Source: Rhodosorus marinus CCMP1338 (Eukaryota; Plantae; Rhodophyta). Taken from it: a stretch of DNA of 64,000 nucleotides. This document shows, one piece after another, positions 20,953-47,734 of this stretch (positions within the stretch are counted from its first letter, which is position 1; each line of letters opens with the position of its first letter). The stretch is taken from positions 2,728,001-2,792,000 of the forward strand of contig JAMWBK010000003.1 in the NCBI GenBank assembly GCA_029953675.1, read 5' to 3'. The position numbers and the translations under genes are program-made. The notes beneath the pieces were generated by a model. The model made no database searches, had not been told where the DNA came from, and saw only the letters and a list, made by a program, of their open reading frames with translations.

Positions 20953-21798
20953 CTAGTCTGAGTGGTCTACAAATTCCGTCACCCACTGCCCGTCTTTGAA
21001 TTTGGTTACCATCTGCTCCGGGATCGGGGTCTCAAACATATCGTCTGGATCATCCGGCTTTGGAGCGCACAGGTTCACTGCAGCACTCTTGGAAGTTATT
21101 ATCTGGGCATCTGCCAAGGCCTCTGCGCTCAAGTAGTAGGTCAAGGTGTTGCAATTGTCGACGGTCACCGCAGGGGAAGCGCCAGTTGATTGGATCTGTA
21201 TATCGTTGCTGTTAACAACCTCGCAGATAGACAGAGCACTCTCGAAAACGCAGTTAAACTTCTTGCAGCTATCGATTGCGATCGAATTGCACTTGCCCTT
21301 GATCTGGATGGTCGATTTGTTGCAACTATAGATATACACAGACTCCTTGATGCTGTTAACGTTCAAAATTATCTCATTATTGCCCTCAAAGAACTCTACC
21401 ACCCATTTCTTCTTCCCTTGCAGTTCCATTTTTGGAGCCTTTGCCGCCGGAGCTGGCTTCGTTGGTGCCGCAGCCGGTACTGCGGCCGGCGTCTGTGCTG
21501 GCTTCGGAACCGGTGCTGCTGCGTCCTCGTTCACCGGTCCACGAGTAGCCTTCTTCAGCCCAGATCTTACTCCTCCCTCCCCTAGATAATTTATCTCAGC
21601 AAACAGTGCGCCAGCTCCGGCACCCTCAGTCGCGCTCTGTTTCTGCAGCTCAGCAGTATTTGGTGGTGGCGGTGGAGGTGGTGGTGGCGGTGGTGGCGGT
21701 GCTGCCGCTGGAGGCGTGGGCGCAGCTGCAGCTGTATCAGCTGCTTTCCCATTCTCAACCGTCGCACCAGACTCAAACTTCTCAATCAACTTCTCCAT
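20953..21798 (-). CDS. CAP: Cyclase-associated protein, C-terminal half only (poly-Pro, WH2, CARP)
   Basis: Run of 12 Pro, WH2 GALFAEIN...GLKK, CARP KWVVEF...VYIYSC...IQIKGKCNSI.ID.C...E.PIPEQ. The helical folded domain is absent. Single exon with its own ATG. Confidence 0.92.
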   Translation of the reverse strand: MEKLIEKFESGATVENGKAADTAAAAPTPPAAAPPPPPPPPPPPPPNTAELQKQSATEGAGAGALFAEINYLGEGGVRSGLKKATRGPVNEDAAAPVPKPAQTPAAVPAAAPTKPAPAAKAPKMELQGKKKWVVEFFEGNNEIILNVNSIKESVYIYSCNKSTIQIKGKCNSIAIDSCKKFNCVFESALSICEVVNSNDIQIQSTGASPAVTVDNCNTLTYYLSAEALADAQIITSKSAAVNLCAPKPDDPDDMFETPIPEQMVTKFKDGQWVTEFVDHSD

Positions 21799-23616
21799 GG
21801 CAATACGACTACACAATCCGCACGCACACACACACACACACACACAGTCCCCGGACCCCCCTAGAAAAACCCACCTGCGCCTTACTAAACCTTAGGCTAG
21901 CAAGACCACGGAAGACAAAGAAAACAAAGCCCCGCACCTAAGAAAAAGCACAGAATTCCGTCGATCTGAGATTACCGCTCTTCCCACTTCCCAACGGATC
22001 AGACACTAATCCGCAGCCCCTTCCCGAAAAGACGTCTTTTCCACTGCTAAGTCATCCTTTGTCCAGAAAAGTCCCAAAACTCCTGGGTTTCTTGGCGCAT
22101 CCACAAATCACAAACTTTGGATAATAATAACGTGGACAGACTGTCTTACCTTTCCCGATAAGATTGGTTTGGGGGGGGAAGAGGGGGGTGGAGTGGAAGA
22201 GGAGAGAGGGTTAGACTCGAGTTTGATTGTGTATCAAAATTCGAATGTGTCATCCGTCACAATACGTGTCCCGGGGAAAGCTGTGGCCAATTTCTTTTTC
22301 TGAGGTTGGAAAAATATTTTGGATTAGAATATTGGACTGGAGTTGAAATTAAACCCCTTTTTTATTTTTTTAAATATGATTCTTATCTAATGATAACCTG
22401 GCACGCGTCCTTTTGATTCTTCTATTTAACGGTAGAATATTATCTAATCGATGTATGCCACGTGTCGTTGAATCCGGTTGGGTCCTTGAAGCGCTGTTTT
22501 CGGCGTATTTGGTGAGGGATGCGAGGGCAAGATGCAGGGGTTTGCGGACCTACGGCTTACGTCTCCGCGTGATGGCTTGATACACCACTCGGCTGAGCTT
22601 AGGAGTTACTAGCAGTTAGTAGCGCTCATTCGGAGTGGACGTCAGCTGGGTGTCCACCTCGGTTTGCGTCGGGCAGTCGAGGGAGTGGAGTGTGAGGTCA
22701 CGGGGATACGCCTGACTGCCACGGCAAAGAACAGCGCCGCGCTACCATGGCAGAGGTTCATAGGTGTTTCTTGTGGAAGTCGCTTGAACCAGTATCACAT
22801 TGATTCTGCCAATTTTGAGTGCTGCATCAGTTGGCAGCAGTTGACAGAAGCGCTACGCGCACCGCCAACACATCGGCTCAAGGGAGACAGCAGCAGCTGG
22901 ACCCGCATAAAACCGATGACCAAAAGAAGAAAATCGATACCCTGCACATGATGTTAACTGTTGCTGGAGGAATCATTTGATTGACGATTGGACTCGATGC
23001 TTGAAATGGTACGAAAAGATCTACACCGGGGCAGGACTGGGCAGCACGATCTCCTCAGCTACGAATACTTTCACATTTTTTGTTGATCATCACAATGAAA
23101 ATTCAGTTGCTTTGATGGGACCCCCGTTGAAGTATTTGTAGTTTTAGCTTGTTGATGGTAGCCTTGCACAACAAGATGTGGTGTGGAGGGCAAGCATTGA
23201 ATCAATCGTATATACCGATCACCGATCATGTCCTATGATTTACATGGTGGACCATATAGCTAGATCTTTATATTTATTTTTTCCCAGTCTTGTTTACAGC
23301 ATTAGACGGTCTGCGCCCTGCCTACCCAATAACCTTTCTAACAGGTTGTTCTTCGCCGACAGGAGGGCGATTCGACCAGGTGCTACAAGCACACGGTCGG
23401 AGACCTCATTGCTCAGCAGGATTGCAAATGGAAATAGATTGTCCTCCGTCGAATTCTTCTCTTCAGTGACTGCTAGAATCTAGTCCGCGGCCTCCAGGGG
23501 GTGCTCGAGGACTTCGGAGGTGGGAAAGAGGACGAACGGGGAACACGGATGGTTTGGCTTCTTGGAGTAGAAAAGGAGGAATTCAAGGTCGCAGTTTTGT
23601 GTGATCAACTTAAATA

Positions 23617-24078
23617 ATGGGTGATGAGGCCGAAGGTGGCGGAATTTCCGGCTTTGGAATCAGAGTCTCAAGTGCTCTGCTTTCAATGCTCACGAAGCCG
23701 GCAGCATCCGACGGCGATCGAGATGATAAAGAAGAGAACTCAGGAGCAGATGAGCGCTTGCCAGAGGAAGGAGCGATTGAAGCCGATGAAGAAGAAATCA
23801 TTGTACCTGTACACGGAGCTTCCCGGTCTAGCGATGAAATCGTGGAGATGGCTGAGAGCGCGAAAGTCACTGAGATGCTAGAGAGCTTTGACCGTTTGTT
23901 TGCTGAGCCACGACCTACTGCTAGGGACCCGGAATGCGCTTTGGCATATAAAAAGGCGAGGGAATGTAGCGCGAGGAATCCCGGCGACCCACTCTCATGC
24001 TCGAAGCTTTTGGCGGAGTTTTCTCAATGCTCCTCGAAAGGACAGTCAATCCCTGTTCCTCCTTCCCAAACTACCTAG
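23617..24078 (+). CDS. Twin CX9C (CHCH) protein, Mic19/DUF1690-like
   Basis: C-ALAYKKARE-C-X10-C-SKLLAEFSQ-C near the C-terminus; N-terminal G..FGIRVSSALLSML. Confidence 0.65.
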   Translation: MGDEAEGGGISGFGIRVSSALLSMLTKPAASDGDRDDKEENSGADERLPEEGAIEADEEEIIVPVHGASRSSDEIVEMAESAKVTEMLESFDRLFAEPRPTARDPECALAYKKARECSARNPGDPLSCSKLLAEFSQCSSKGQSIPVPPSQTT

Positions 24079-26314
24079 CAATAGTAATTTAAAGACCGAC
24101 ATTCTTAGCGGAGATCTATGTTCACACTACGAGGCGCTTTTTTCTACTGGAAATCTTGCGAGCATATCACATTTGTCACATCACGTGCTGCTACCCATCA
24201 GACTGTAGTCACTTTTTCCGGACTCTCATGCGAAGCGGGGAGGGTTACCAGCACCAAATACATCAGTGTTTTGGTAATATATCGAAGCGAGGGTAAGCTG
24301 ATCGCCTCGCATTACCGTCCTTGTCGGCGCGACGTTCGGCATGGATGAGGGGGAAGTAGCCTTCGCCGAAGTCGCCGGGAAAGCTTGGCAGAGAAAAGAT
24401 ATATTCCTCCCTCAGATTCTTGACAACTATAGATCGCCGAGCTCATGAGCATCATGCAGGGACTCATAGCCAGCACGAGTGCAGAGACTAGCCTCCACCT
24501 CTGCATCTCACACCTTTGCATGCCAAGCGAAAAATTACTCTAGTCTGGGGTTAATTTTTCCGAGACTGCTCAATGCACCGCAATGCGAAGCTGAGCTATG
24601 TGCGGGCTCAGATCTACCGGACGCTTTGGCAAGGAAACGCGGAGCTCGCGATAGGAGCTCAGGTGTGTGGACCTGTTGGCGAATCCACTGGCACCTGTTT
24701 TATCTTTGGACGTAGCATGAGACCCAGGTAGCCGCAAACGCAACACTAATCCTACTACATTAGATAGTAGTAGGATTAGTGTTGCGTTTGCAGTAGGCAG
24801 GGGTACCGAGTCAAGTTTACGGTTGCAGTTGGGTTTTGTACCCAACTGCACGGATATTCATTGGCCTTGGATTGATTTAGCCTGCGCGCCGAGTACCCTA
24901 AAATCTTTCGTACACTGTACTGTCCAATAAGCATCGACTCTTTCGATACTAGGCAGAGGTCACATCGAGACCATCGCATTCCCATAAAATCATAATTTTA
25001 ATCGATTCCTTCGTCTCCAGGATCGGCGACCAGATTCCATGTAGCACGAATCTCGAGCAAAAATTTAGCATCTTACCCCCTCCGAAATTACTTCATTCGA
25101 CAAAAGTATATCTAGCTCCCACCCCTTAGGACCCAATATAAAGCTATCCTCCCCCAAAACCTTCAATGAAACACGATCAACTGCACTCGTCCTGACATTC
25201 ATCGACTTGTATTCCCCCTCACCCACCCACCCCCGGCAAAGATTTACGATCAAAAGGTTTAGCGAAAGGCAAAGGACGGGGGGGTTACGAACAATTTTCT
25301 TACTGCAAGAAAAAGGAAACATATCCCCCCTTCCTTCCCCACACCCCCTCTCATCGCTCGTTTCAGATGGTATCAGGAACAGATAAAACTTTCGGGCAAA
25401 ATAATATCTAAATAAATGAAATAGGCATATAGATTTGGACGAGTAGATAACATGCGGACTTCGATCATTACTCTTGAGGAATTGTTTCGGTACTGATCTA
25501 TTAAAAATATATATCGCGATACAAACCACCATACAGTTCCTCTAAAGCCAACGATTTTAATGAACTGATTACAAAATAGACATCTCTTGTTTCATGGATC
25601 TCATGAAACAGATAATAAAAAATCGATCTTGGGCAGAGGATAGTTTGGTTATCTTATTTTCTTTAGGATTCAAGCAAATAAATCGAGCGAGACTAGCACT
25701 TAATAAAATATAAGAAATTCTAATGACCTCCCAGAGCTGCGAGGATCGGGGATGCATGCGATGGTGGTTTCGTGATCCTCGGAAGAGGGGGGTGAGTTGC
25801 GATTTGCGAATATGAGTTTTATTTGATAATATACATTTGGGTTTCGCGTGAAGGGGGGATGGGAGCGGCTCCGCATTTGTTTTCAATTAATGCCATTATG
25901 AGCGCTCATCATTTTTTTGCTGATTGAGATAGGGGGGGGGAGAGGTGGGGGAGGTAGGGTTCGAAATTAAGTTGGGTTAGGAGGGGGGTATTGTCGAGGA
26001 TCGCATGCTGAACCAAATGTGAGAGGCTTTTTTTTTTTTTTGAGGGGACTTTGTGAAATGGTGTGTTTTTTGCATGTTGGACAGGGTTTTCACGTTTTTT
26101 CGAATTTAGATTTTTTGGGAGGGGCTGAGTGGAGCACCCTCCGCGAAGAAGAAAAGAAATATATTAGGCTCATGTGATCAATGGGAAGGCAAGGTGGATG
26201 GTAGATGTACAGGAGTTCGGAAGGCTTTTGGGTGAGGGTGAAGGTCTGAATCGCGGTCGTTTGATTTTACTGGTGAGTTTTCGAAGTCAGAGAGAAAAAA
26301 AAAGAAGCAAAGAG

Positions 26315-27205
26315 ATGTTGGGTTTCGTGAATGGAGTTTCCCCTCTGGCACAGCGCCGCAGCGGTGCAGCTGTGAGTGTCCGCAAGGGCGTCGTCACAAT
26401 GCTGCAGTCCAAGGCAATGCCTTTCATGGAGGCCCCCCCTGCCCTTGACGGTACGTGCAGAACGTACGCAGGTTGATGCTTCTCCTTGGAAAGTGCATAT
26501 CAGGGTCTGATATTTTGGTGCTTGTTTTGTATCGATGGTAAACAGGAAGTATGGCTGGTGACAACGGATTTGATCCTCTGGGTCTCACCAACTACTTCGA
26601 CGTCAAGTGGTAAGTGACGGAGGCTTTCAACTTTGGCTTTGGAATGCTCTCTAAGTTTTTTCTTCCGTATCTATGCTTTTGTGAATCCTAGGATGCAGGA
26701 AGCTGAGATCAAGCACTGCAGAATTTGCATGCTTGCCTGCATGGGCTTCCTTATTCCGGAGATCTTCACTCTCCCATGGAGCTACTTCCCCAAGGACATG
26801 CTTGCAGTTGATGTTCACGGTAAGGCGAGAGGATGCATTCTCAATTCTGTGCATCATGTGCCTCGCGGAGGAGGACGATGCTAATAATCCTGTGCTTTTC
26901 AAACAACAGACTACTTTGTCAAGACCGGTGGACTCGCTCAGGTCAACCTTTTCGTCTCTGCCTGGGAAGCAATCATTGGTATTGCTGCTCTGCAAGCGAC
27001 AATGGAGGGAGACAGAGCCCCAGGAGATTATGGATTTGATCCGCTTGGTCTCGGCAAGGACCCGGCCACGATGAAGAGGAACCAGACAGTTGAGCTGATC
27101 AACGGACGTCTTGCCATGTGCGCCATCGGTGGATTCATTCACCAGCAATGGATCTACAAGCAGGGAATTATTGACCAGCTTATGCACTTCAAGCCCATGT
27201 ATTAG
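26315..27205 (+). CDS. Light-harvesting chlorophyll-binding protein (Lhcr type); 4 exons
   Basis: Transit peptide MLGFVNG, SKAMPFM..P..LDG...[39 protein letters not shown]. Confidence 0.96.
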
Positions 27206-27539
27206 ATGAGTGGATGGACGACCTCCTGTACCCATTGCACGCAGTTTAAAATTTCAGAATAAAATGACCTTCACGTGACGCGAAGAACTGACACGGCGGC
27301 GGAGTCTTTCCTTACGCACGACTACCGTTCTCGTGCAGTAGGGCTACATATTTGCATGCACACAGAGTTCCGTTGAACCTGCCATGTAGTTCCTTCGCGC
27401 CGAAAACACGGACCAGTTTCCGCGAACGAAAGCAACGCCATTGCCCCCCAGCAACTCCTGATCTATTCGTTAGTAGTTGATCTCATCACAGGGAATCTGA
27501 AAGAGTCCCAACGGGGTCCTCGGCTAGTCGAACATGACA

Positions 27540-28200
27540 ACTAGCGGAACCACTGTCGGACAATGATGATCTTATTTAGACGCTCAGTGCTGCGAGAAGG
27601 CTTACGAGTCCAATGCGCTGTGAACGAGCCCCGGAACATCGGGGCGGTAATCGGTAGTCTGAACATGAAACTAGAGGCAGAGATCAGGTCTGCCACAGAC
27701 TGATCGCATCGATGAGCAAATACAAGCCAAGTTGCCAAGCAAGCTGGCATTATCCGTTGAAAAAATCGTTTTTCACATTGCGCTACACCTTGCCTGGAAA
27801 CGAGTTCAGGATTCCTCATCAATTCAGGCCCTTCAAGCTGATGACGTTCTTCATCGGGGAATCTGTACACGAAATGGAATTTCGTAGGCTAGCCGACATC
27901 AGTCGATCATCTGCACAGGTGAAGACCATCCTCATCATCGTACCGTACAGAGCTTCGCCTCGCATGCAAACTCTGTGCACCAATTGCCGTTTTTCAGAGC
28001 CGAAGAGGGGGGGGTATCGCGATTTTCCGATGAGCTGCATGAGGGTGAGAAGGTTTTCTATCCGCTGCTGGAGTACGTCATCTCCACGAGGTAGCTCCCC
28101 GGAGTCCCCTTCCCAGTTCGAGGTCATAGGCTTCCTGAACTGGGCGAAGACTGACTTAGCACCGTTTGACATTCTTGCTGCCTTGCTGCGAATGCCAAGG
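27540..28200 (-). mobile_element. Ty3/gypsy integrase-region relic
   Basis: Frameshifted GEALY..., a degenerate HHCC region (SFPGKV*RNVKND...CQ) and KPSRSTERLNKII, resembling the integrase ER.N motif. Confidence 0.45.
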
Positions 28201-28346
28201 GGGAACTTTGTCAGAGCTCCCGGAGGAACCTGGGTGTATCTGTATTGTTAGAGTATTCCATAATCGCAACCTATGCTAGGGCTTTTGAGAACGGCTTCGT
28301 AGGGAACCTTTAATTCTGTGGTTTCTAGAGCGGGTAAGACGTTGAT

Positions 28347-29282
28347 ATGAACGCGACACGCCTGATTGCTCTCGCTGCCATTCCTCTTACGGCGATTCAA
28401 TTCTACCAAAGACCTGGGATGGCAAGTAGTGCGACTAAGAATGACAAGGAGGTTGATGATGCGATGAGCGATGTGACGACTGAGAGCAACGGTGGGAAGG
28501 AAGAGACTTGTCCCGAGCCGAACGAAAAGAGGCTGGTTCTGAAATGTGGCGCACATATGATCCCTGACTCGCGCAAAGGAGATCAAGGAGAGGATGCATG
28601 GTTCATCCAAGATAGCGCTGTAGGCGTTTTCGACGGCGTCGGCGGCTGGAGGAGGAAAGGTGTGGACCCTGGGAAGTATTCGAGAGCACTCAGGGACGGC
28701 TCTGTACAGTATATAAAAGAGCATGGAGTTGGTGACTTAAAATTGGCTCTAAAGCATGCAGTTGAAGGCAATCCTAACCTGGGAAGTTCCACTGCTTGTT
28801 TGGCAGCCATGCCTCAAAGCCCTTCGCTGCAGGTACTGAATTTGGGGGATTCTGGATTGATCCAGTTTCGGAAGGAGCAGATAAAGTTCTCTACACCCGA
28901 ACAACAGTTTCGGTTCAACTTTCCTTATCAATTAGGAACGAACTCGTTATGTACAGTTGATGACTCTGATGCGTACGTCCTAGAGATGCAGACGGGGGAT
29001 ACAGTAGTGCTGGCTACTGACGGTGCACTGGACAATCTTGGCGAAGGCGAGATGGAATCCCTGGCTAGGCTGACGAAGGACTTCAGCCCGAACAAAGCCG
29101 CGGAAGAATTTGCAAAAACAGCGAATCGAAACTCGCTGGACCGGGAGTACGATAGTCCGTTTGCTCAGAACGCAAGAAAGGTTGGAAAGAATTACTCCGG
29201 AGGGAAGCAGGATGATATCACGGTGGTCCTTTGCAGAGTATGTGAGCAGTCGAAGAGCTGGTTACCATGGTCCAAGCTCTAA
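28347..29282 (+). CDS. PTC7: PP2C-family protein phosphatase, PTC7 type
   Basis: GEDAWF, GVFDGVGGW, GSSTAC, NLGDSG, QQFRFNFPYQLG, LATDGALDNL, GGKQDDITVV. Confidence 0.93.
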   Translation: MNATRLIALAAIPLTAIQFYQRPGMASSATKNDKEVDDAMSDVTTESNGGKEETCPEPNEKRLVLKCGAHMIPDSRKGDQGEDAWFIQDSAVGVFDGVGGWRRKGVDPGKYSRALRDGSVQYIKEHGVGDLKLALKHAVEGNPNLGSSTACLAAMPQSPSLQVLNLGDSGLIQFRKEQIKFSTPEQQFRFNFPYQLGTNSLCTVDDSDAYVLEMQTGDTVVLATDGALDNLGEGEMESLARLTKDFSPNKAAEEFAKTANRNSLDREYDSPFAQNARKVGKNYSGGKQDDITVVLCRVCEQSKSWLPWSKL

Positions 29283-30729
29283 TTAGGAGTTCAGAAGGAG
29301 ATGCGGATGCGAGCCTTCTACATCGTCGGCAGTCGATCGTAAATGACGTTCACTCGCACCTACGGGAAACGATTTTTCAAATAAGAAGGTTCCTTGAGGT
29401 TTAAATAAGTTTCAAAAATGTTAGTGGTTGCCTACTATCGTACTCCGCAACTCGACAAAGGCCGCGCAGCCTACCATGTCTGTATAGGAGAAGTTCTTTC
29501 CTACGAGATACTTTCCTCCCTTCTCTTCAGCTCTTCTTGATTCTCTGTCAAGTGGTCGTCGGCTATCTCCACGATCATTTTACTGTTCTGCGAAGCGTAC
29601 CTACCTTGAACCCGGAAAAAAAAAAAAATAGGTTCGCTAGCGGAAATCTAATAGAACTGAGGGGGCGGGGCTACTCAAAAGCCCCGCCGTGTGTATCGCT
29701 TCAGAGGCCCGTCTTCTCGGTCAGTCTTATCAACCATCACCTTTCTATCATAGCACAGAATGGCGTCCGAACGATTTTTCGACTCTCCGAGTAAAGTGAC
29801 TGCTCCCTTCAGGGCAGCCCGGTCGCACACTCTCGATTTCAGCCGCCGACTTTGACAGGCGATCTTCGCTGTGGAGGAACGGCGCCTTTACCGCCTGTCC
29901 CGCTCCGAGTTTTCAGCTTAACAGGGATTTCCAATTCCAAGTACGAACGCGTTCTATGCCTATAATCCACTCTAGCGTGTGTCCGCTCAGCACGTAAGGA
30001 TCGTCACGACGACCTGAAAATATTAAAGATCCCCTTCAATCTTCTAAATGGCTGTGACCCACTGCTCTCTACTGGATTCCTCACGCACGCAGACTCCACT
30101 CTTGCAGCAAAAGGGCTTTATGTCCGTGCACTACAGTTTGCATCTTTGCGAGCAGTCGCTGGCGCAAATTCCAACTCTTCCCAGTTGAATCGCAACAGAT
30201 TTCTTGCTAGACTCAGTGATCGTGCGACAGCTGCTGAACTATACTCAAACGGTGTCCGCGAGGAGTCTGACTTGTTAACGGTGAACGAATGCTATTAACG
30301 AGTGAGTGAGCACACGGTGAGTGCTTTTTCGCATCTTACTCGGCTGAGCACGGTGCCCGATCCCACATTCACATGTGGGCTCTCAACCACAGCCACGTGA
30401 GAACAATGCGGCTCGTTCCTCACCTCCACAACGATCGTTGAGGAGTACTATTCGTAGCGGTGTTAGCAGCACAGGTAGAAGTAGCCATGGTTCACCGATA
30501 AACGAGTGATTTTCTTCCCCCTAACCACAGTCCCTCTACCTGGGAGTTTGTGAAAGGTTAAGGGCCCCAGCAGACTTTCTCGAGGAAACGCTTTTGAAGG
30601 GTTACGAGCAGATCAGATTCGCTGCTCGGTAATTGGGCACCGAGAGTTTGGGCTTCTGCAAGCCCTTTTTCTTCCCGCTGCCCAATGGGTTCTTGGTCTG
30701 TAGTACGTATTCTACTTTTCGTTTAATCT

Positions 30730-31594
30730 TCAGTTGTCGTAAGAACGGCATTCATCTGCCTCTGGTGATTCCTTGCAGTATTGGGCGAGTGGGTCGTTCT
30801 CATCCTCAAACTGGCTCAGCAAGTACTCGGCGGATGACTTTTCATATGCGCCGGTATCCACGTTGAGGGCAGCGACGACTCCGTCATTGGCGATCATGGA
30901 GTAGCGGGCCGAGCGGATCCCGCCAAAGGCTCCAGTATCTTTCTCCAATCCGATAGCCTTTGTGAACGCGGCATCACCGTCGGCGATCATCTTGACCTGT
31001 TTTCAGTTGGCGTAAACGCATCATTAGGGGTGATCCACAAGTCCACGCACTAAGGTATGCGCGCATGACTTCAGCCTTACCACGCCTTCTCCTGCGATCT
31101 GCTTCATGAAGGCCGTCATCACAAACCTATCATTCACAGAGAGCACGTAAAGGTCTTCGACACCCTTCTCCTTGAGCTTGTCCGCGTTCTTCACGAAGGA
31201 CGGGGCATGGGACTCGGTGCAAGTTGGGGTAAGCGCGCCCTGAGAATAAAAAAGACGTTTAAAATCCTGCCTTAGACCATCGCACAATTCGTCTTCCCCA
31301 GCCCTCTCCCCTCCTTTCCGTTTCAAAACCGTCAGTCCTCACAAACTAAAAAGCGTACAACCGATAGCAAGGCCAGCTACGCACCGGAACTGCGCATACC
31401 GCAACGGTCTTTCCCTTGAAAATATCCTCGACGGTCATAGATTCTCCATCAACAGTAAGGGAAAGCTCCATCGGCAGCTGATCTCCAACCTGCAGAGACA
31501 TCCTCATCGCCGATCGCTGCACCCTGCGGGACGCACGCTTCGCCCCAACGAAGGACGACCGACCCATCGACACCCCAGACACGAAACCAATCAT
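30730..31594 (-). CDS. Plastid type-II peroxiredoxin with a C-terminal CP12-like extension; exons 31594-31385, 31239-31081, 30996-30730
   Basis: Transit peptide MIGFVSG, VPGALTPTC..SH.P, SVNDRFVM, ADG...FTKAIG, RS.RYSMI..DG.V; ends DPLAQYCKESPEADECRSYDN*. Confidence 0.93.
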
Positions 31595-32930
31595 CGTGAC
31601 AAAACAGTAGTATCTTCCTCTTGCTTCAAAAAAAAAAGTCTTCCCTGCGTAAAAAAATTACCAAACCCTCCCCACAACAGCTCTTCTTCCCCCACCCCCT
31701 CCAACCCCTCAATCGAAGATTTCTTATATACACCTCAGATCGTGTCAACAGACCCAATCCAACCACAAAGAATTATTAACCCCCTTTATACGCGAAGCAA
31801 TATATCCTCCATGTATGTATCTTTTACTAATTTAATTCAACTATTGACCATTTGATTGAGATATATCTAAGGGGTATTTGTTATTTTTCTACCGCAGATT
31901 TTTCTCCTGTTGATCGCTGAGCACGATGGAGCGGAGTCTGTTGTCTGGCACTAAGACAGAAGACTCAGGTCCGTTGAAAAGCCAGGAGAAGTATCTTTAA
32001 GCGCATTTGTATATCGAATTAAGTTTAGTCACGTGTCTTTAGGTACCAATGAACGTACGTTAGTCAGTTAGGAGGCGAGCCGGTGTATTTTTGAGGCATT
32101 GATTTGCATCGAGATTTCAAAACTCGAAATATTCGTAGATATATAGAACGAGTACTCTTTGATTAGGTTTTATCTAGGTAGACTATGGACTTAAGTTTAG
32201 AACTTGTGGTGAGTTTTTTTAAAAAGAATTTTAGAAGGAAATTGCAAGGTTGAAGAATGGATGCTTTTGTTCTGGTTTTGCCGTTTTTGGATTCGGATCT
32301 TTCGGGCAGGAGAAGATTTTTTCTTCGAAGCTCTCAGCTGAGAGCTTTTGAGCTAGAAATGCGCAACCCAGCAGAGTATGTGATGGATGTTTTATCCATC
32401 GTAGGTCTTCAGTGTCCAACTGATGATCTGATGTGGGCTATGACTGACGTACAAGAAGGAATACGGTGAAACCCCCAAAAAGCGCCCAACGGCGTCCGTA
32501 TCTTTTCATTCTCGGCGCTGGTGAATGAGGGCTTTATACGAATCACTGACGGATTGGTCCCTTATCTTCCCTGAGTGGGATGACTTAAGCTGATGGAGCC
32601 ACACGATCTGAAGTTTCCTCCTGCCTGACTTGGATCAACTGCTCCGGGGCTCTTCAGAAGTTGTCAGCAACTTCCTCGGTGTTCGACGAATGAGGGGTCG
32701 GGAGTGGAAAATCACAGCGCAGCAGCAACGCCGGTTGATCTTGCATGTGGAATCCCCATAGACTTGATCAAGGACTAAGAGAGCATCGGAACGCCTTGTG
32801 TAAAGCAATGGGTTGCTTCATGGTGCAACGCGTTCTGCTTTACATTGTTAAAGATGGATTAGTAGGTTGGTTTCGCTGGATGCTCTGTACAGGTCGCTCC
32901 ACTGCATGCGGACTATCGGTCTTGAATTTT

Positions 32931-34142
32931 CTAGACCCAGTCTTCGTCGTCATCATCGTCATATTCGTCGTGAATCTCAGGAGCATTTGTTTCGTTCTGG
33001 CCATCCAAGGTTGACGCCATCTTGGTGCCAGCGGCTTCCAAATCCACAGCCGCTTCAGGGTTGTTGTGCCCGGAGCTTTCTTCATCTATGTCTTCCGTGT
33101 CACTCCATTTGAGTTCCTCCTCCTCGTGACTATGTGAGTTTTCAAGGAGAGCAGTTCGTCGCTCTTCCCCCTGCTCCAGCATAGCCAGGCCATAGAAGTA
33201 CCTTGACCAGAAAAGCTTTCGATCAAGGAGAGCTGGAACAGTCCTATTGTACAAGACCTAAAGCAAACAAGAAATTGCATATGAGCCATCGCAACTCGAA
33301 CTGTTCGAAACTCGAAAGTAATCTGCACGAGCCTGACTCACCTGGATTTCCGGGTTTTCCTTAAAGACCACGTCAATAGCGTCTTGGGTGTCGCTCATCT
33401 CAAAGTTATCCCTGAAGACCTGAAAAGCCTCCTGGTCCTCCGGCTCATGGCAATAAGTATCAGGATTCGCTTGCAATTCCCTGACCTTTCTCTCAAACCT
33501 TGACATCGGCATTGGGATCGCCTCGCGATGCACGATGGGAGCAGGGTTGTCAGAGTCAATGCCAGTCTGAATCCGAGAATTGAGTTCTGTTGCTGCAGTC
33601 TTGATGAAACCGCCGAACATTCCCAGAGTACCTGCTACTGTATCCTGCAGTTGAGTTATCTCCTTCTGAATATCAAGTTCTTGGTCGTCAGATCGGCTAG
33701 GCTCTGCTGGTGTGTAGGATGCTGCGCTCAGATTGCCAGCTTGTGGTTCTCTCTGAGCATCCTTTGGACCAAAATCCTGGGGCGCCTTTTCGCCCTCCCC
33801 TTCGATTTTCAATTTCATATCTTTGGCAGCTTCTGTAACCTTCCCCAGCGACAAAGATGCAAAACTCCAAAACTCCTCTGCTGCGACTTTTATTCGGTCC
33901 TCAATCTTCTCTTCTCCTTCAAGGTCATCCTCTTCATCTCCTCCCCCATCCGAAACTCCCTCAGCTTTCGCGTCATCCACCGGCTCAAGACTGGCATTCT
34001 CACGCTCAACGTCATCGCCCTCATCCAGCCCTTCTTGAGCCTCTCCCTCTACGCGCGAGGCTTCTTCTTGATCCTCTTCTCCTTTGAACGAAGTATCTTT
34101 TTCACCCCTATCCACTTCTGAAGAAACCGTTGGCGCTTCCAT
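32931..34142 (-). CDS. BSD-domain protein; 2 exons
   Basis: LQANPDTYCHEP...F...I...ENP...YNRTVPALLDRKLFWSRYFY...E..R..LL; acidic N-terminus. Confidence 0.88.
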
Positions 34143-34665
34143 TATACCACGTCCTCATCAACAAACAAATTTTCACACATGTAAATCGATTCTCGCTTAT
34201 ACTTGAATCAAAAATAGCAAAGGGTAGTTTTTCGTTCTATTCCATTGTCATAGCTGATAGCACCTTATACTCCAGGCATTGTACCTGCCCAACAGCATCT
34301 CACATCCGAAAAAACAGCTTCAAGTATTGATGCAGACTGACAGCTTTCAAAACAGTCCGAAAAAGAAAACTCTAGTGGGGGCCGTATAGGGAATTGATTT
34401 TCGACCATCCTCAGTTTTCGCTCAGCCATCTTCAAAGGATTCAATGGAGATGGTTAGGAGCAGTGCAAACAAGTTATTTCATCCAATATTGAGAAAGACT
34501 TGTAGGCGTTGGGAAGGAAACCTTTGCCCATGGAATACAAACTGTCACCTACAATTTTAGCTTCCTGCCCCCGTTGAGAACCGTTCCGAACTACACCGGC
34601 TTTCTGAAGAAAATCATTTTGTAGGTGTTTGAGAGTGAGTCATGGAATACAAGCAAAGGTCTCCA

Positions 34666-35039
34666 GGCAGAATCCTGGTGTTGAACGGGGAGCGCTCCTC
34701 CTCCATCCAGTTTTTAAGTGTAAACTAGGGACGGGTTGAACAGCTGGGAATTTCCATATGGCCTGAAGTGACGACAGCTTGTTGTTTTCATGTGAGCATA
34801 AAGCCAAGGACAATTTTTCCTGCCGAAGCGCGTGCCAATTCTTCGCTGTTCGATTAGCTCAATGAACCATGTATCGATCTTGTCGTCTCCGGAGAAATAA
34901 TCCGCTTTCGATCCTTTCATTGGACTAAAAGTTTCACTTGAAACTGGATGGAGGAGGAGCGCTCCCCGTTACCCCGGACTAAAAGTTTCACTTGAAACTG
35001 GATGGAGGAGGAGCGCTCCCCGCACACCAGGATTCTGCC
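34666..35039. repeat. Foldback/MITE-like element with ~60-bp inverted arms and a 54-bp tandem duplication in the right arm
   Basis: ggcagaatcctggtg (34666) pairs with caccaggattctgcc (to 35039). cggggagcgctcctcctccatccagttt at 34686 is inverted at 34922-34968 and 34976-35022, which are two identical 47-nt copies. Confidence 0.85.
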
Positions 35040-35658
35040 GGAAGCATACGTTTTCATATGGACAGGTGGAACGATTTAATTAGCTAATTAGTGCACGTGT
35101 CATCTTACTATTCACTGTAGTGCTCAATTGTCTCGAGATACTTCCATTAATAGATATCCACGTGTCCGAAAATTCGTTTTGGCCAGGCTATACCATTCAA
35201 AATAGTGCACGTGTCTAGATGAATAAATGATTGGTTTTTAGAATATGATAATGACTGAGATCAATTGTTTTTTTGTTTTTGAAGAAATTCAAATTTGGGG
35301 TTTTGCAAACTCCCTTGTAACGGCGAAGATCATCTCACGCTTGCACTGTTTGTTGGAGGTGCTGCCCGGTTGAACCCGGAGGAGGCGGAGGAGGCGGTTT
35401 CTTCATTGAAGCCAATTCGCTTTTCTCGTAAAACTAGACTGTGAGGTGAAGTACTGTGTATGTGTTTCGTAGTGATCTGCGGGGCTGAGCTTTTGGGAGA
35501 AACTGGTGAGGCCTGCTGTGACAAGTTTTGAACCCGGTCGCGTTGGAGACCTGACGGAATGCTAGAAGCGGGCTCTCGACAATGAGGAAAAGGAATTGAA
35601 TGCAGACCGTTTGGCTTGGGTTCAATATAACGTAGCTCGTACCTATTTATCTGAATAG

Positions 35659-38600
35659 ATGGCGGAACAATCCGAAACAGATCTGCTGCAGAATGCTTCA
35701 AAGCTGCCAGTCGCGGAAAGGCTTGCACACAAGCACTGGAAAGTGCGAGAAGCTGCCTGTGTTCGGATGGCAGAGAGATTCAGTGAAGCTGCTGAGGAAG
35801 ACCAAGTTTTTACCGAAACGCTAGCGTTCATCCCAAAAATTGTTCGCGATTCAAACGCAGCTGTACAATTGGCGGGCCTTGGAACTGCAGGAAGATATGC
35901 CGAACTCGCTCCGGAAATTCTTGTTAGGCAAATTGCGCCTGCTTGCGGTAAAGCAATCGCCGAGAAGACGTTTACGGGTCGACCTATCAACAGGAAAAAG
36001 GGAGCCGAAACTGTTCTGTCCTTTGTCTATGGGGAGGCTGGTGAGCTGGTAGTTGATGGACTGATCGCAGTCGGATTTTCCAGCAAGAATCCGAAAATAA
36101 CAGCCGCCTGCGTTGGGGCCGTGAAAGACGCTGTAGAGAACTTTGGAGTGAAAAGTGTCGGTGTCCAATCGATTGTTAAATCCCTTCCTGCCCTTCTCGA
36201 GCACGGCAACGGTGACGTTCGCAACGCGGCAAAATCGCTCACATTGGAGCTGCAAAGATGGCTAGGAGATGCGATATTTGGATCCCTGAAAGGTGTACGG
36301 GAGGTCACCTTGAAAGAGCTCCAAACTTTGGCGGACGAAAACCCGAAGAAAGGCAAGCCGGTTGCGTTGAAGGTAACGAAGAGTCTCGAGCAGAGGACGG
36401 CGACAGAGTCAAATTTTGGAGCAGCTGATGAACCGGATGGAGAGCTAAACTTTGGCGAGGACAATGAGCCCGCAGTTGATTTGCGGGAGACGATCGTCCT
36501 CGCTGATCAGTTGAAGACGCTCAAAGTAACAATTGGAGACGAAAAACCGTTAGACTGGGTAACAGCAGTGGAACACTCCAAGTGGAACTACAGAAAAGCT
36601 GGGCTGCAAGCCATATGCTTGGTGCTTGAGAACAGAAGCATGGAAACGGCTGATGGACTCGAGTCCATTGTTCCCAAGTTGAGAAAGATATTGGCGAAGG
36701 ATGCAAACATACATGTCGTTGCCGGAGCTGCAATGGTATCAGCGAGCCTGGCGAAAGCACTCTGGAACAAATTTCCTGTGGCGGCCTGCAAGGTGTTGGT
36801 GTCCTCTCTTCTCGGAAAATTCAAGGAGAAAAACAGACTTGTAATCGAGGCAATTTCAGGAGCACTTGATGCATTGTTTGAGTACAAGTGCGTCTCGATC
36901 AAAGATATTCTGGAAGACCTAGCCGAAGCTCTCGAGGCTAAAACTCCAAAATCGAAGATTGAGACTCTCAAGTGGTTGAATCGATGTCTCCTTCTGCGGT
37001 GTTCAGCGGCTGTTGATATTCTGAAGGATCTCATTCTCATTCTCCTAAAGAGCTGCGAAGATCCCGCTGCAGAAGTGCGGGACTTAGCGATAATGAACCT
37101 CGCAGAGCTCGTCTTCAGATTTGGGGATAAGAAAACTCAACCGTACCTGGCGAAACTTGACAAGATCAGAACAGACAGAATCTTAGAGCTCGTGGGAGAG
37201 AAAAAATCATCCTCTCAGGGTGCGAAGGTTCAGAAAGGTAAGAGCTTTGGTTCTGTGTTATGATCTGTTACATTGATCTAAAAAGTTTTCCCTCGTCCCC
37301 ATCGTGAAACATAGAAGAAGCACCAGCGACCACAGACAACGCAAGACAGTTGACTGGAGAGGCCAATGGTACAGATGGCACAGCGGAAAAGCAGAGCCCA
37401 GCAGTGCCTGATTTCGTATCAATTCAGCGCTTCTCTGAGGACGAGCTGGCCGCGAAGATGATGCCTTTGTTCCCCGGCCTGGACATCTCACAGCTGAGTG
37501 CGAAGAGTTCGTCGGCTCGTAAGGTCACCATTGATGCGATAAGGGATGTTTCCGAGGCCAAAGAACAGCTATCAGTTGAGCAAGCGTCGATTATCCTTTC
37601 GGCCATTACGACTAGTCCAGGATTCAACGACAGTCAGTTCACGTGCCTGAATTCGAGGATCGAGGTGGCAAGTGTGGTTCTCAAACTCTGTGAGAGCAAG
37701 CCCGTGGCCGGAGAAGTGATCGAGGAGATAGTTGCAGGCATAGTCGTAAAGCTGGGAGATTTTAAGAGTGGTAAACTTGCACACTGTTCGCTGCTCGAAA
37801 TCTCAGATTATTCGTCACCCGAGCTTGTCTATAAAGGGTGCCTCAAAGTGGCAAGTACTTCAACAAACCCTCGAACGCTTGGGGGTATCTGTGACATGTC
37901 CAGCGCAATCGTCAGCAAGTACGGAGCTTTTATGAGTTTGGAGGATGCTCAGCTGATTGTGTCGAAGGGGGCCGACTCCGCTGCTCCCGCGTTGAGGGGA
38001 TCTGGGATGGGATTCGCGGCGGTTTACGATTACCAATCTCGAAACGACGAGGTCAAGAGCTCAATCCGTGAGGATGATAAACTTCTGAACGCGTATGAGA
38101 AAGCATTTGCAAAGTTGGACGGAGAGGTCATTGTGGTCAAGAAGGCGTTGTCGGTGGTTAATAGTGAAGTCAAACCTGTTGAGGAAACATCCTTGGGACA
38201 CAGCACCGATTCCCATAAACGAAATTCCATCGATGTTAACCAGATTGCAGCGAGAACACCCGATCGAGCTCGATCTGGATCCAATCGTCATACGCCAGGG
38301 TCGTCCGCTCGCAAGAAAGCACGTGCGCGAGTGAACGCACCTAAGACAAGTGTTGCGGATGAGAACTTGAGCCCTGATCGGTCATTAGGAAGTGAACGAC
38401 TGGATGCAGCTATTGAATCGCTTCAAGCGCAAGGAGTGGATGGAGACTGTAGAGCATCGGCGCTAGCGGAGATCGAGCAAGTAGTGAAAACAGAAAAACT
38501 GTCGGATGATGCCTGGTTTACTATTCTGGAAGTGGCTTCAGCGCGACTTGCGGACGCCCACCGCGAGGCGTCATCAACCGCCTTCCGTATTTTTGTAAAA

Positions 38601-40769: not shown

Positions 40770-41613
40770 GAAAGATCGCCTCGCGCTTGGACGCGATCTA
40801 CGTAGCCGATCAGACTGAGTCTCGATATAATAACTTCTTCGTAGATAAAAAAACAGAAACGACTTGTAAAGAAATACCGCTTCGATTCCGCTGCTACAGT
40901 CTGCTTCTTTGAAGATCTTCACTCGCAACGTGTTCGTTGACTGGGAACGTGGATGTTAGACGAGGGCTTAAACCAATTCCCTCTCCATCGACTCCGATGT
41001 ACTCCACACCAAGAACACTCAGTCAGGCCATACTCTCGACTGCCAAAGATGATTCCTGCCAACCGTCTGCAAAGATCAATCGGCGGAGGTGGATCGCTAT
41101 GTTTCGCGGTACACGGCCCAGCGCTTTGAAGCGAATTGCTTAAGAGTCAATACTGAACCATACCACGTGAAACATACCTCTAAGACAGATACGTACAGCG
41201 AAGTCCTCAAATCCCCCAAGACTGTGCGATTCGTTGTCTCTGAAATGATGGTGGTCTTACTGTCAGCAATCAGGCTTCCCCACACCAATAGCTTTCGTTC
41301 TTGAGCAAATGCGGCAAACGCTGCTCATGGCATCAGAATGTATCCTTCTCCACCTCCTCTACTGGTCTCTTTCATCCTGGTTGGAGGTCGAGTCCTGTTG
41401 GATTGTATCGTTCACGAAGCATGTTCGATGGCAAAAGTTGTCTCATCCGCTATTGTCATCGGGTGAATTTTGTCGTGCTCGCCAATTCGCGAGATCATGA
41501 TCCAAAAGGACAAACGTCTGATCGTACATTAAGAGGCCAAAAGGAGGACGGTTTCAAAATACCTGTGAAGGTCTTTCGAGAATCCAAATGCGCAGCAAAG
41601 TTTCAAGGTTGAT

Positions 41614-47327: not shown

Positions 47328-47734
47328 CACGAAATTTTTATAACTTTGTATTCGAAGCGGAAAGGCTTCTGTGCCTTTTAGTTTGGAGTGCCCAACGTCA
47401 GACCCCTCGGAGCTGTTACCATATTAATCTGACAGCTCCGGGAAGACCTGTCTATAGCATTGATCATTTTAGCTCGTAGTAGTTTTAGGAACATAGGAAT
47501 CCCCAGTCAAAAAGTACAACTAAACAAAAAGAAACCAGTCGTTCTCCAATAGAGAACCCAGCCAAAAAAGAATGAAGCAAGCAACGCGATGACTCGATTT
47601 GCTATTGATAATAAGATTCACGTCGCACAACAAAAAAAAAGATTAATTAGCGACGATCGTATGCGTGCAAATAACATGAGCAACAAATACAAGCGCCTCC
47701 ATCCCCCACCCGCCTGTCCACTAAGGCTACCGCC

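What the first reader, a model, noticed from the sequence alone, without database searches (positions are those of the whole stretch)
20953..21798. CAP gene lacking its helical folded domain: one half of a split cyclase-associated protein
Seen: a single-exon ORF, MEKLIEKFESG-linker-polyPro-WH2-CARP, with no HFD. Known: canonical CAP is coil(RLE)-HFD-PP1-WH2-CARP in one chain, and C-only CAPs occur in apicomplexans. The missing HFD is encoded separately at 47735-48483 on the same strand, about 26 kb upstream, with about ten genes in between. Inference: gene fission, with MEKLIEKFE possibly a remnant of the oligomerisation coil.
Basis: partly seen in the sequence, partly recalled or inferred. 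Interest (0 to 1): 0.7.

Follow-up and report, generated by a model that had tools for sequence, protein, structure and literature searches.

The report
Red-algal CAP split into separate genes
This red alga (Rhodosorus marinus) really does encode the actin regulator CAP without its N-terminal helical domain, but the split is ancient and shared across red algae, and the helical-domain gene 26 kb away is a divergent side-branch rather than the true missing half.

Summary
Window 21798..20953 (minus strand) is a single-exon 281-aa gene with polyPro, WH2 and CARP and no HFD. A three-exon 176-aa gene with an HFD fold lies at 48483..47735 on the same strand, 25.9 kb upstream, with ten genes in between.

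- **The split is old.** HFD-less C-CAPs occur in every red-algal lineage among the hits: Rhodosorus, Porphyridium, Madagascaria, Gracilaria, Chondrus and Palmaria. Transcript-derived complete ORFs support several of them.
- **The nearby HFD gene is divergent.** It belongs to an 'sHFD/D0' subfamily (99/100 bootstraps) that lacks the Phe-Tyr pair mouse CAP1 needs to bind actin.
- **The canonical HFDs sit elsewhere.** They lie in proteins of 3-6 tandem HFDs without CARP. R. marinus transcriptomes contain one (P0128/P0166).
- **Two assemblies show adjacency.** In two unidentified red-alga-like assemblies the multi-HFD gene lies directly upstream of C-CAP on the same strand. I read this as the footprint of the fission.
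- **D0 is fused in some taxa.** There it forms the N-terminus of the multi-HFD protein, so sHFD probably acts with that protein.

No paper describing this was found. I class it as a new variant of a known kind, of moderate to high interest.

The parts
20953..21798 (-). C-CAP gene: single-exon CDS of 281 aa plus stop, with the order N-terminal motif, P1, WH2, P2, CARP
   Evidence: ORF and translation. Pfam CAP_C E=9e-52. Aligns to human CAP1 residues 208-468. Called as a 281-aa gene in GCA_029953675.1.
21766..21798 (-). N-terminal motif MEKLIEKFESG (residues 1-11), specific to the Rhodosorus-like lineage
   Evidence: Conserved as MEKLIEKFESG, MNDLIAKFNGG and MNNLIAKFENG in P0001-P0003 only. Absent from Porphyridium, Gracilaria and the other red-algal C-CAPs.
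21661..21720 (-). Polyproline region P1 (residues 27-46, including a run of 13 Pro), the presumed profilin-binding site
   Evidence: Read directly from the sequence. Aligns with the CAP1 polyproline tract.
21541..21615 (-). WH2 motif (residues 62-86, ...LFAEINYLGEGGVRSGLKKAT...)
   Evidence: Mouse CAP1 L256, I260 and L270-K271 of LKHV are conserved as L65, I69 and L81-K82.
21442..21522 (-). Ala/Pro-rich P2-like linker (residues 93-119)
   Evidence: Read directly from the sequence. Occupies the position between WH2 and CARP in the alignment to CAP1.
20962..21441 (-). CARP domain (residues 120-279)
   Evidence: Pfam CAP_C covers profile positions 1-157 of 157. PDB CARP structures 6fm2, 1k8f and 1k4z match at E=5e-29 to 4e-24. 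All tested ADP-actin contact clusters are conserved: K347/Y351/Y353, K365/N367/D372 and D446/E449.
47735..48483 (-). sHFD gene: 176-aa stand-alone divergent HFD (D0 type), three exons at 48483-48474, 48347-48001 and 47908-47735
   Evidence: The spliced CDS equals P0111 exactly. Pfam CAP_N 34.9 bits. AF2 model has pLDDT 91.3 and six helices. Foldseek top hits are CAP1 HFD structures at TM 0.87. A spliced orthologous mRNA contig, L003, has an upstream in-frame stop.
21799..47734 (.). Intervening 25.9 kb holding ten unrelated genes on both strands
   Evidence: Public gene calls with Pfam hits and the ORF list. No HFD-like or CARP-like coding segment is present.

Best explanation
The window is from Rhodosorus marinus. 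In red algae the CAP machinery is spread over separately encoded proteins, and this window holds two of them.

1. **C-CAP (21798..20953).** This is an autonomous gene encoding P1, WH2, P2 and CARP. It most likely dimerises through CARP, binds ADP-G-actin, displaces cofilin, catalyses ADP-to-ATP exchange and hands the monomer to profilin. That is what the C-terminal half of canonical CAP does.
2. **sHFD (48483..47735).** This is a stand-alone six-helix HFD-fold protein of the divergent sHFD/D0 subfamily. It has lost the aromatic pair that canonical HFDs use to grip actin subdomain 2. In other red-alga-like genomes the same domain type forms the N-terminus of proteins with 3-5 further canonical-type HFDs. 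It therefore most likely works as a detached N-terminal module of the multi-HFD 'N-CAP' protein, which R. marinus encodes elsewhere. It is probably not the pointed-end depolymerase itself.

The tandem HFD array plausibly replaces the coiled-coil oligomerisation of canonical CAP with covalent multivalency.

**Shown:** gene structures, domain identities, residue conservation, phylogenetic distribution, synteny, and separate mRNAs in relatives.

**Inferred:** all biochemical activities, the partnership between sHFD and multi-HFD, and the order of evolutionary events.
For: **Source.** Both genes map to GCA_029953675.1 contig JAMWBK010000003.1 and are called there as separate genes.

**C-CAP.**
- Pfam CAP_C E=9e-52, and the protein aligns to CAP1 residues 208-468.
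- The WH2 and CARP actin-contact residues are conserved.

**The split is ancient.**
- The red-algal C-CAP homologues are about 200-330 aa and carry CAP_C only: Rhodosorus, Madagascaria, Porphyridium, Gracilaria and Palmaria, and Chondrus.
- Transcript L004 has a 5' in-frame stop and a poly(A) tail.

**sHFD has the HFD fold.**
- The AF2 model has pLDDT 91.3 and six helices.
- Foldseek matches CAP1 HFD structures at TM 0.87.
- The family profile matches the CAP1 HFD by sequence at E=6e-10.

**sHFD is divergent.**
- An exhaustive HMMER search finds only 27 relatives.
- The nearest are stand-alone HFDs of Erythrolobus, Porphyridium and two unnamed red-alga-like sources, then a D0 domain.
- sHFD plus D0 separates from all other HFDs in 99/100 bootstraps.
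- F162/Y163 is M-E in the Rhodosorus protein and absent from every sHFD and D0. It is conserved in canonical HFDs and in the red-algal multi-HFD repeats.

**Multi-HFD proteins.**
- Three to five Pfam CAP_N matches per protein and no CAP_C, in Porphyridium, Compsopogon, Pyropia and Logan assemblies.
- R. marinus P0128 (UniRef A0A7S3EAM7) and P0166 carry at least 2-3 HFDs.

**Fusion and adjacency.**
- D0 is fused to the N-terminus of the multi-HFD protein in P0115, P0117, P0118, P0120 and P0121.
- sHFD is adjacent and convergent to the multi-HFD gene in Porphyridium and in L007.
- The multi-HFD gene is directly followed by C-CAP on the same strand in L090 and L091.

**Published precedent.**
- The N and C halves of CAP can function separately (PMC7543520).
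- A monomeric HFD needs more than 20-fold higher concentration, and dimerisation restores activity (PMC6876575).
Against: - No biochemical or localisation data exist for any red-algal CAP piece.
- The R. marinus multi-HFD is known only from transcriptome fragments of other strains. I could not locate it in this genome assembly.
- A full-length CAP elsewhere in the genome was not excluded by a whole-genome tBLASTn.
- The sHFD family keeps a basic-acidic pair at the R118/E119 position in most members ([RK]D), though not in Rhodosorus (S-V). Some actin binding by the family therefore cannot be ruled out.
- The organisms behind L007, L090 and L091 are unidentified. They are red-alga-like by similarity only.
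- In L090 the C-CAP call lacks an ATG and appears to have introns. A fused or co-transcribed arrangement in that species cannot be fully excluded.
- The same-strand, N-to-C order of sHFD and C-CAP in the window could still reflect a real ancestral relationship between these two genes.
Confidence: 0.72

Rival explanations
1. A simple two-piece fission produced the 176-aa HFD gene as the missing N-half of this C-CAP, and the two products reconstitute a canonical CAP in trans.
For: - Both genes lie on the same strand in N-to-C order, 26 kb apart.
- The HFD fold is genuine.
- The halves of CAP can function separately (PMC7543520).
Against: - sHFD lacks the F162/Y163 actin-binding pair and other HFD signature motifs.
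- It groups with D0 domains of multi-HFD proteins in 99/100 bootstraps.
- Its Porphyridium orthologue sits next to the multi-HFD gene and on a different contig from C-CAP.
- R. marinus also has canonical-type tandem HFDs.
- A monomeric HFD without an oligomerisation domain is a poor depolymerase.
Confidence: 0.13
2. sHFD is a neofunctionalised HFD paralogue that no longer takes part in CAP or actin function. Its proximity to C-CAP is coincidental.
For: - The actin-contact residues are lost.
- The Pfam score is very low, 35 bits against about 170 bits per canonical-type repeat.
- Linkage to C-CAP is not conserved in Porphyridium.
Against: - The same domain type is fused to the N-terminus of multi-HFD proteins in several assemblies.
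- It lies next to the multi-HFD gene in Porphyridium and L007.
- Both points argue for a retained functional link to the N-CAP module.
Confidence: 0.12
3. The HFD and CARP coding regions belong to one gene. They would be joined by a 26-kb intron or by trans-splicing, or separated by an assembly error.
For: Same strand and correct N-to-C order.
Against: - The HFD CDS ends in TGA. In the orthologous mRNA contig it is followed by a 3' UTR that runs into the convergent D27-like gene, the same neighbour as in the window.
- That sHFD/D27-like arrangement recurs in an independent assembly.
- C-CAP orthologue mRNAs have their own 5' UTR with an in-frame stop.
- Ten genes on both strands lie in between.
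- C-only CAPs are universal among the red-algal hits.
Confidence: 0.02

Closest known systems
Canonical cyclase-associated protein (CAP/Srv2; OD-HFD-P1-WH2-P2-CARP in one chain)
   Same: The window C-CAP has the P1-WH2-P2-CARP order. All tested WH2 and CARP actin-contact residues are conserved. sHFD has the six-helix HFD fold.
   Different: The C-CAP chain has no OD and no HFD. The HFD-fold protein is a separate gene and lacks F162/Y163, R118/E119 and the HTTGLxWN motif. The canonical-type HFDs of red algae lie in tandem arrays in a third protein.
Apicomplexan C-only CAP (Plasmodium, Cryptosporidium; PDB 2b0r)
   Same: It is a naturally HFD-less CAP that still catalyses nucleotide exchange (PMC5951797). 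The 2b0r chain matches the window protein at E=1e-18.
   Different: The malaria-parasite CAP consists entirely of a CARP domain. The red-algal protein keeps polyPro and WH2, and red algae retain HFDs in separate genes.
Engineered split or oligomerised CAP constructs (N-Srv2 plus C-Srv2 in trans; GST-dimerised HFD; artificial ODs)
   Same: These experiments show that the halves can act separately and that HFD multivalency, not the OD sequence itself, drives activity (PMC7543520 and PMC6876575). The natural red-algal arrangement fits both points.
   Different: Those are laboratory constructs. Here the split and the covalent HFD multimerisation (3-6 tandem HFDs) are natural and conserved across the phylum, with an extra divergent D0/sHFD module.
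Tandem-HFD proteins outside red algae (Namystynia karyoxenos, Lithocolla globosa, Rhizamoeba saxonica)
   Same: Three or four tandem CAP_N-type domains in one chain.
   Different: The repeats group by species in the tree, which suggests independent duplications. I did not test whether these proteins carry CARP. No D0-type domain was seen in them.

Membership tests
CAP, C-terminal half (P1-WH2-P2-CARP) | CARP beta-helix domain (Pfam PF08603) above the curated threshold | tested here: met
   175.2 bits against a cut-off of 23.8, with full profile coverage. PDB CARP chains match at E=5e-29.
CAP, C-terminal half (P1-WH2-P2-CARP) | WH2 motif with the LKxV-type core and its N-terminal amphipathic helix | tested here: met
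   L65, I69 and L81-K82 (LKKA) align with mouse L256, I260 and L270-K271. R253 is not conserved (Ala).
CAP, C-terminal half (P1-WH2-P2-CARP) | ADP-actin contact clusters K347/Y351/Y353, K365/N367/D372 and D446/E449 (mouse CAP1) | tested here: met
   All eight residues are identical in the window protein (residue list from PMC5951797).
CAP, C-terminal half (P1-WH2-P2-CARP) | CARP-mediated dimerisation and nucleotide-exchange activity | not testable with these tools
   This needs biochemistry. I can only say that the C-terminal region is present and conserved among red-algal orthologues.
Canonical full-length CAP | OD and HFD in the same polypeptide as CARP | tested here: not met
   The 281-aa protein has no CAP_N match. 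The upstream 1.8 kb holds no HFD-like segment. Orthologous mRNAs start at the same Met or have 5' in-frame stops.
CAP helical folded domain (Pfam PF21938) | Six-helix bundle fold and a Pfam score above threshold | tested here: met
   34.9 bits against a cut-off of 27. The AF2 model has six helices and pLDDT 91.3. Foldseek TM is 0.85-0.87 to 9y9j, 6rsw, 6rsq and 1s0p.
CAP helical folded domain (functional, actin/cofilin-binding type) | Aromatic pair F162/Y163 and salt-bridge pair R118/E119 that contact actin subdomain 2 (mouse CAP1) | tested here: not met
   The window sHFD has M-E and S-V at these positions. FY is absent from all sHFD and D0 sequences but present in canonical HFDs and in red-algal multi-HFD repeats.
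Red-algal sHFD/D0 subfamily (defined here) | Forms a group with stand-alone red-algal HFDs and the N-terminal D0 domains of multi-HFD proteins; shared motifs DxLExHL and HxxFADAxE | tested here: met
   Profile scores rank the sHFDs and then a D0 domain first. The bipartition is recovered in 99/100 NJ bootstraps. The intron position and the D27-like neighbour are shared with P0123.
Apicomplexan-type C-only CAP | Protein consists of the CARP domain only (no polyPro, no WH2) | tested here: not met
   The window protein keeps P1, WH2 and P2. The definition comes from PMC5951797.

The most novel reading that the evidence does not exclude
Red algae have rebuilt CAP as a multi-gene machine. The coiled-coil-driven hexamer of HFDs is replaced by a single chain carrying 3-6 tandem HFDs, a covalent 'shuriken'. 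The monomer-recharging half (P1-WH2-CARP) is a separate gene that still lies directly downstream in some lineages. A degenerate HFD (D0/sHFD) serves as an N-terminal adaptor that is either fused or encoded separately. On this reading, the same-strand sHFD...C-CAP arrangement in the Rhodosorus window is a relic of an ancestral D0-(HFD)n then C-CAP locus from which the repeat array was moved away.
Probability: 0.4. Interest if true: 0.75.

Novelty: new variant of a known kind. Interest (0 to 1): 0.6.

Why it matters
CAP is treated as a universal single-chain machine that couples pointed-end depolymerisation (HFD oligomer) to monomer recharging (WH2-CARP).

A whole phylum that separates these activities into different genes, and that multimerises HFDs covalently instead of through a coiled coil, is a natural experiment on three open questions:
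- whether physical coupling of the two halves matters;
- how many HFDs are needed at a pointed end;
- what the oligomerisation domain really contributes.

It also corrects annotation. The NCBI names 'Adenylyl cyclase-associated protein 1' and 'Adenylyl cyclase-associated protein 2' in Porphyridium are not paralogues of vertebrate CAP1 and CAP2. They are the N and C parts of a split system.

The sHFD/D0 domain, an HFD that has lost its actin-binding residues yet is conserved, points to an unknown function for this fold.

Tried and rejected
- **First splice model.** My donor AAAGT|GTTAGT gave a 180-aa product. I replaced it with the GTAAAG...GAAG model, which reproduces the deposited protein P0111 exactly and matches transcript P0112.
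- **Word-indexed protein search with a profile of HFD repeats.** This was uninformative. The candidate filter saturated and did not return even the source proteins.
- **The search for related loci with five sequences.** It returned 80 loci with HFD-type matches of 28-52% identity. None came from the Rhodosorus transcriptome sample, so it could not place the R. marinus multi-HFD gene.
- **First bootstrap tree script.** It timed out. I re-implemented it.
- **Chaudhry 2014 and Makkonen 2013.** Neither is held in the library. I cite them only through the papers that discuss them.
- **Fused multi-HFD/C-CAP gene in L090 and L091.** I considered this and rejected it on present evidence. Stops occur in all frames across 595 and 1270 nt. 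I found no in-phase donor at the end of the multi-HFD ORF. The L091 C-CAP starts at ATG-polyPro like the independent genes elsewhere.
- **Hidden HFD exon upstream of the C-CAP ATG.** Considered and rejected. A TGTAG follows the (TG)n tract, but no HFD-like coding segment exists there. Orthologous transcript-derived ORFs start at the same Met.
- **tBLASTn of all retrieved CAPs against the window.** It found only the two loci.
Full report
**1. What is in the window**

The minus strand at 21798..20953 carries an uninterrupted ATG-to-TAA ORF of 281 aa. Pfam places a complete CAP_C/CARP domain at residues 120-279 (E=9e-52) and finds no CAP_N.

Against solved structures the protein aligns to human CAP1 residues 208-468, which is everything after the HFD, at E=2e-40. 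The aligned parts follow the canonical order: polyproline (P27-P46), WH2 (about residues 62-86, LFAEIN...GLKKAT), an Ala/Pro-rich linker, and CARP.

The residues that Kotila et al. 2018 showed to be needed for actin binding are conserved (PMC5951797). These are WH2 L256, I260 and L270-K271, and CARP K347/Y351/Y353, K365/N367/D372 and D446/E449. Only R253 differs. An in-frame stop lies 31 codons upstream of the ATG.

The second locus, 48483..47735 on the minus strand, is a three-exon gene.
- **Exons:** 48483-48474, 48347-48001 and 47908-47735.
- **Introns:** GT..AG, 126 and 92 nt.
- **Product:** identical to the deposited 176-aa protein P0111, 'hypothetical protein NDN08_003576 [Rhodosorus marinus]'.

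My first guess at the first intron was wrong by four residues and was corrected. Pfam CAP_N scores 34.9 bits against a cut-off of 27 and spans the whole profile.

An AlphaFold2 model built from a seven-sequence alignment is confident (pLDDT 91.3) and consists of six helices. Foldseek against the PDB returns only CAP HFD structures above noise, at TM 0.85-0.87: 9y9j, 9q7o, 6rsw, 6rsq, 1tjf and 1s0p.

The two genes are 25,936 nt apart on the same strand. Nine called genes and one further 294-aa ORF lie between them, on both strands. A six-frame HMM scan and a tBLASTn with all retrieved CAPs find no other CAP-like coding segment in the 64 kb.

**2. Source and transcript evidence**

Both genes map to Rhodosorus marinus assembly GCA_029953675.1, contig JAMWBK010000003.1, where they are called as separate genes.

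*C-CAP transcripts.*
- The closest C-CAP relative (P0001, 88% identity) comes from a Rhodosorus MMETSP transcriptome and starts at the same MEKLIEKFESG.
- A 71%-identical orthologue lies on a 1150-nt transcript contig (L004). That contig has an 89-nt 5' UTR containing an in-frame stop and ends in poly(A).

*sHFD transcripts.*
- The sHFD orthologue P0112 (78% identity) lies on a transcript contig (L003) in which both introns are spliced out.
- An in-frame TGA precedes its ATG.
- After the stop codon comes the antisense of a D27-like gene, the same convergent neighbour as in the window.
- An independent assembly of a related species shows the same sHFD/D27-like pair and the same intron position (L008).
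- An intron-retaining isoform (P0114) is also present in the transcriptome data.

This speaks against an upstream HFD exon for C-CAP, against a 26-kb intron, and against misassembly. It remains evidence from relatives, not from this strain.

**3. The split is phylum-wide and old**

Among the hits of the C-CAP search, every red-algal protein carries CAP_C only and is about 200-330 aa long. The named sources are Rhodosorus, Madagascaria, Porphyridium, Gracilaria and Palmaria and Chondrus. Many unnamed assemblies cluster with them. Hits with CAP_N plus CAP_C begin only at 42% identity or lower, and those that carry names come from other eukaryotes.

Most red-algal C-CAPs start directly with Met-polyPro. 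The MEKLIEKFE-type motif is confined to Rhodosorus-like sequences P0001-P0003. Its resemblance to the L-x-x-RLE of the CAP oligomerisation domain rests on about six residues and cannot be tested statistically.

**4. The nearby HFD gene is not the canonical HFD**

An exhaustive HMMER search of 1.84 billion representatives with the Rhodosorus HFD profile found only 27 proteins. They fall into two kinds.

(a) *Small stand-alone HFDs (155-176 aa).*
- Erythrolobus australicus (P0122).
- Porphyridium purpureum (P0124, KAA8499830.1).
- An MMETSP sample (P0125).
- A Rhodosorus-like assembly (P0123).

(b) *Proteins built from tandem HFDs with no CARP.* Pfam CAP_N matches 3-5 times per protein. My own broader profile also picks up the divergent N-terminal D0 domain, which brings the count to as many as six.
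- Porphyridium KAA8499829.1: 960 aa, 5 HFDs.
- Compsopogon: 768-813 aa, 4 HFDs.
- Pyropia yezoensis: 587 aa, 3 HFDs.
- Several roughly 1000-aa proteins from Logan assemblies.

R. marinus itself has such a protein. P0128 is UniRef A0A7S3EAM7, 'CAP N-terminal domain-containing protein, Rhodosorus marinus', a two-HFD fragment. Its cluster mate P0166 shows at least three near-identical repeats.

In an alignment anchored on human CAP1, the actin-contact residues behave as follows.
- **F162/Y163.** Their mutation abolishes binding of the HFD to cofilin-actin (PMC6876575). The pair is conserved as (E/M)FY in canonical CAPs and in every red-algal tandem repeat examined, including the Rhodosorus repeats. 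It is M-E in the window protein and absent from all sHFDs.
- **R118/E119.** S-V in Rhodosorus and [RK]-D in the other sHFDs.
- **Signature motifs.** The ES(V/I)xALGWV and HTTGLxWN motifs are also missing from sHFDs.

The N-terminal domain of five multi-HFD proteins (P0115, P0117, P0118, P0120, P0121) shares these losses and the sHFD-specific motifs. I call this domain D0.

A neighbour-joining tree of 61 HFD domains separates sHFD plus D0 from all other HFDs in 99 of 100 bootstraps. Profile scores give the same ranking.

**5. Synteny**

- **Porphyridium.** sHFD and the 5xHFD gene are adjacent and convergent, 212 bp apart. C-CAP is on another contig.
- **L007 (Logan assembly).** A D0-plus-4xHFD gene is followed by a convergent stand-alone sHFD that closely resembles its own D0, so it is probably a recent copy.
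- **L090 and L091.** The multi-HFD gene is followed on the same strand by a C-CAP gene, after 595 and 1270 nt that contain stops in all frames. The L091 C-CAP is 68% identical to that of Palmaria, so this assembly is florideophyte-like.
- **Gracilaria domingensis.** C-CAP has no HFD neighbour within 10 kb.

The tandem N-to-C adjacency in L090 and L091 is what an in-situ fission of an ancestral gene would leave behind. I could not name the organisms, and for L090 I cannot fully exclude co-transcription. The L090 C-CAP call lacks an ATG and seems to have introns. However, I found no in-phase donor at the end of the multi-HFD ORF.

**6. Most likely mechanism**

*Shown.* Red algae encode the C half of CAP, tandem arrays of canonical-type HFDs, and a degenerate HFD (sHFD/D0) as separate genes. 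The window holds the first and the third.

*Inferred.*
- **C-CAP** performs the CARP/WH2 monomer-recharging step and hands actin to profilin through P1, as mouse C-CAP(217-474) does.
- **The tandem HFD array** supplies the multivalent pointed-end binding that canonical CAP achieves through its oligomerisation domain.
  - A monomeric HFD needs more than 20-fold higher concentration than oligomeric N-CAP.
  - Artificial dimerisation restores activity.
  - Activity rises with oligomer order.
- **sHFD** has lost the actin-gripping residues. In some taxa the same domain type is fused to the N-terminus of the array (a Rosetta-stone relationship), and in others it sits next to the array gene. It therefore most probably acts with the multi-HFD protein as a detached N-terminal module. 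What that module does (capping the array, mediating association or localising it) is unknown.

**7. Comparison with what is known, and novelty**

The C-CAP passes the tested membership criteria for the CAP C-terminal half and fails the 'HFD in the same chain' criterion of canonical CAP. It is not an apicomplexan-type CAP, because that protein is CARP only.

sHFD is a member of the HFD fold family. It fails the functional-residue test.

Full-text searches combining cyclase-associated protein with red algae or red-algal genera found nothing that describes this arrangement. The Goodson et al. 2021 review of the red-algal cytoskeleton is not held in the library, so I could not check it.

The proteins are already in public databases under generic or misleading names. 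The novelty therefore lies in the interpretation: a natural, phylum-wide split of CAP with covalent HFD multimerisation and a degenerate HFD module. I rate it a new variant of a known kind.

**8. Verdict**

- 'Gene fission' is supported in the broad sense. It is ancient, it involves a tandem-HFD gene that is not in this window, and the 26-kb-upstream gene is a divergent paralogue rather than the missing half.
- The same-strand order of sHFD and C-CAP in Rhodosorus may be a relic of an ancestral cluster or may be chance. I cannot decide between these here.

Noticed in passing
Not in the window; P0116 (Porphyridium, L005 10744-13626), P0119 (Compsopogon), P0145 (Pyropia), P0128/P0166 (Rhodosorus marinus): Red algae encode proteins made of 3-6 tandem CAP HFD domains with no CARP domain. 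In Rhodosorus the repeats are almost identical to one another, which suggests recent homogenisation.
   Followed up: yes
L090 3974-8585 and L091 6001-11083: In two unidentified red-alga-like assemblies the multi-HFD gene is directly followed on the same strand by the C-CAP gene. An Inositol_P gene lies upstream in both loci, and a YchJ_M-like gene lies downstream in L090. A YchJ-like gene also lies near Porphyridium C-CAP (L006), and Spc7 lies upstream of C-CAP in both Porphyridium and Gracilaria.
   Followed up: partly
Window ~10953-12277 (+) and L007 15224-18232: A hemerythrin-domain gene lies about 9 kb downstream of C-CAP in the window. A hemerythrin/zf-CHY/RING gene (BRUTUS-like in my reading) lies next to the sHFD/multi-HFD pair in L007. 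This may be residual microsynteny or chance.
   Followed up: no
P0137 (Namystynia karyoxenos), P0140 (Lithocolla globosa), P0138 (Rhizamoeba saxonica): Tandem HFD repeats (3-4 per protein) also occur in a diplonemid, a nucleariid and an amoebozoan. The repeats group by species in the tree, which suggests independent duplications. I did not check whether these proteins carry CARP.
   Followed up: partly
P0005, P0007, P0008, P0010 (Porphyridium-like transcriptomes): Some red-algal C-CAPs carry a different conserved N-terminal extension (..EFVPEYANFRxKLKPSxN..ILxNPDKYTTxDLN..) ahead of the polyproline tract. It has no HFD similarity and its function is unknown.
   Followed up: no
Window ~21812-21845 (minus strand, just 5' of the C-CAP ATG): A (TG)n microsatellite of about 13 units followed by TGTAG lies immediately upstream of the start codon, in the presumed 5' UTR or promoter.
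   Followed up: no
Window 35659-40769 (+) and ~57094-58483 (+): Two other cytoskeleton genes lie in the same 64 kb. One is an XMAP215/CLASP-type TOG protein (1611 aa, several exons). The other is tubulin cofactor D, annotated as two separate models (917 aa plus 127 aa) that may be one gene.
   Followed up: no
P0114 (MMETSP transcript of the sHFD orthologue): This is an isoform that retains intron 2. It reads through ...MRKVSQKKEPASPDEGG and terminates early, at the position of the window intron 48000-47909.
   Followed up: partly
P0017 (eukprot GFKZ01007325.1.p2): This red-algal C-CAP ORF is labelled '.p2', meaning a longer ORF exists on the same assembled transcript. It may be a multi-HFD ORF, which would indicate adjacency or co-transcription in that species.
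   Followed up: no
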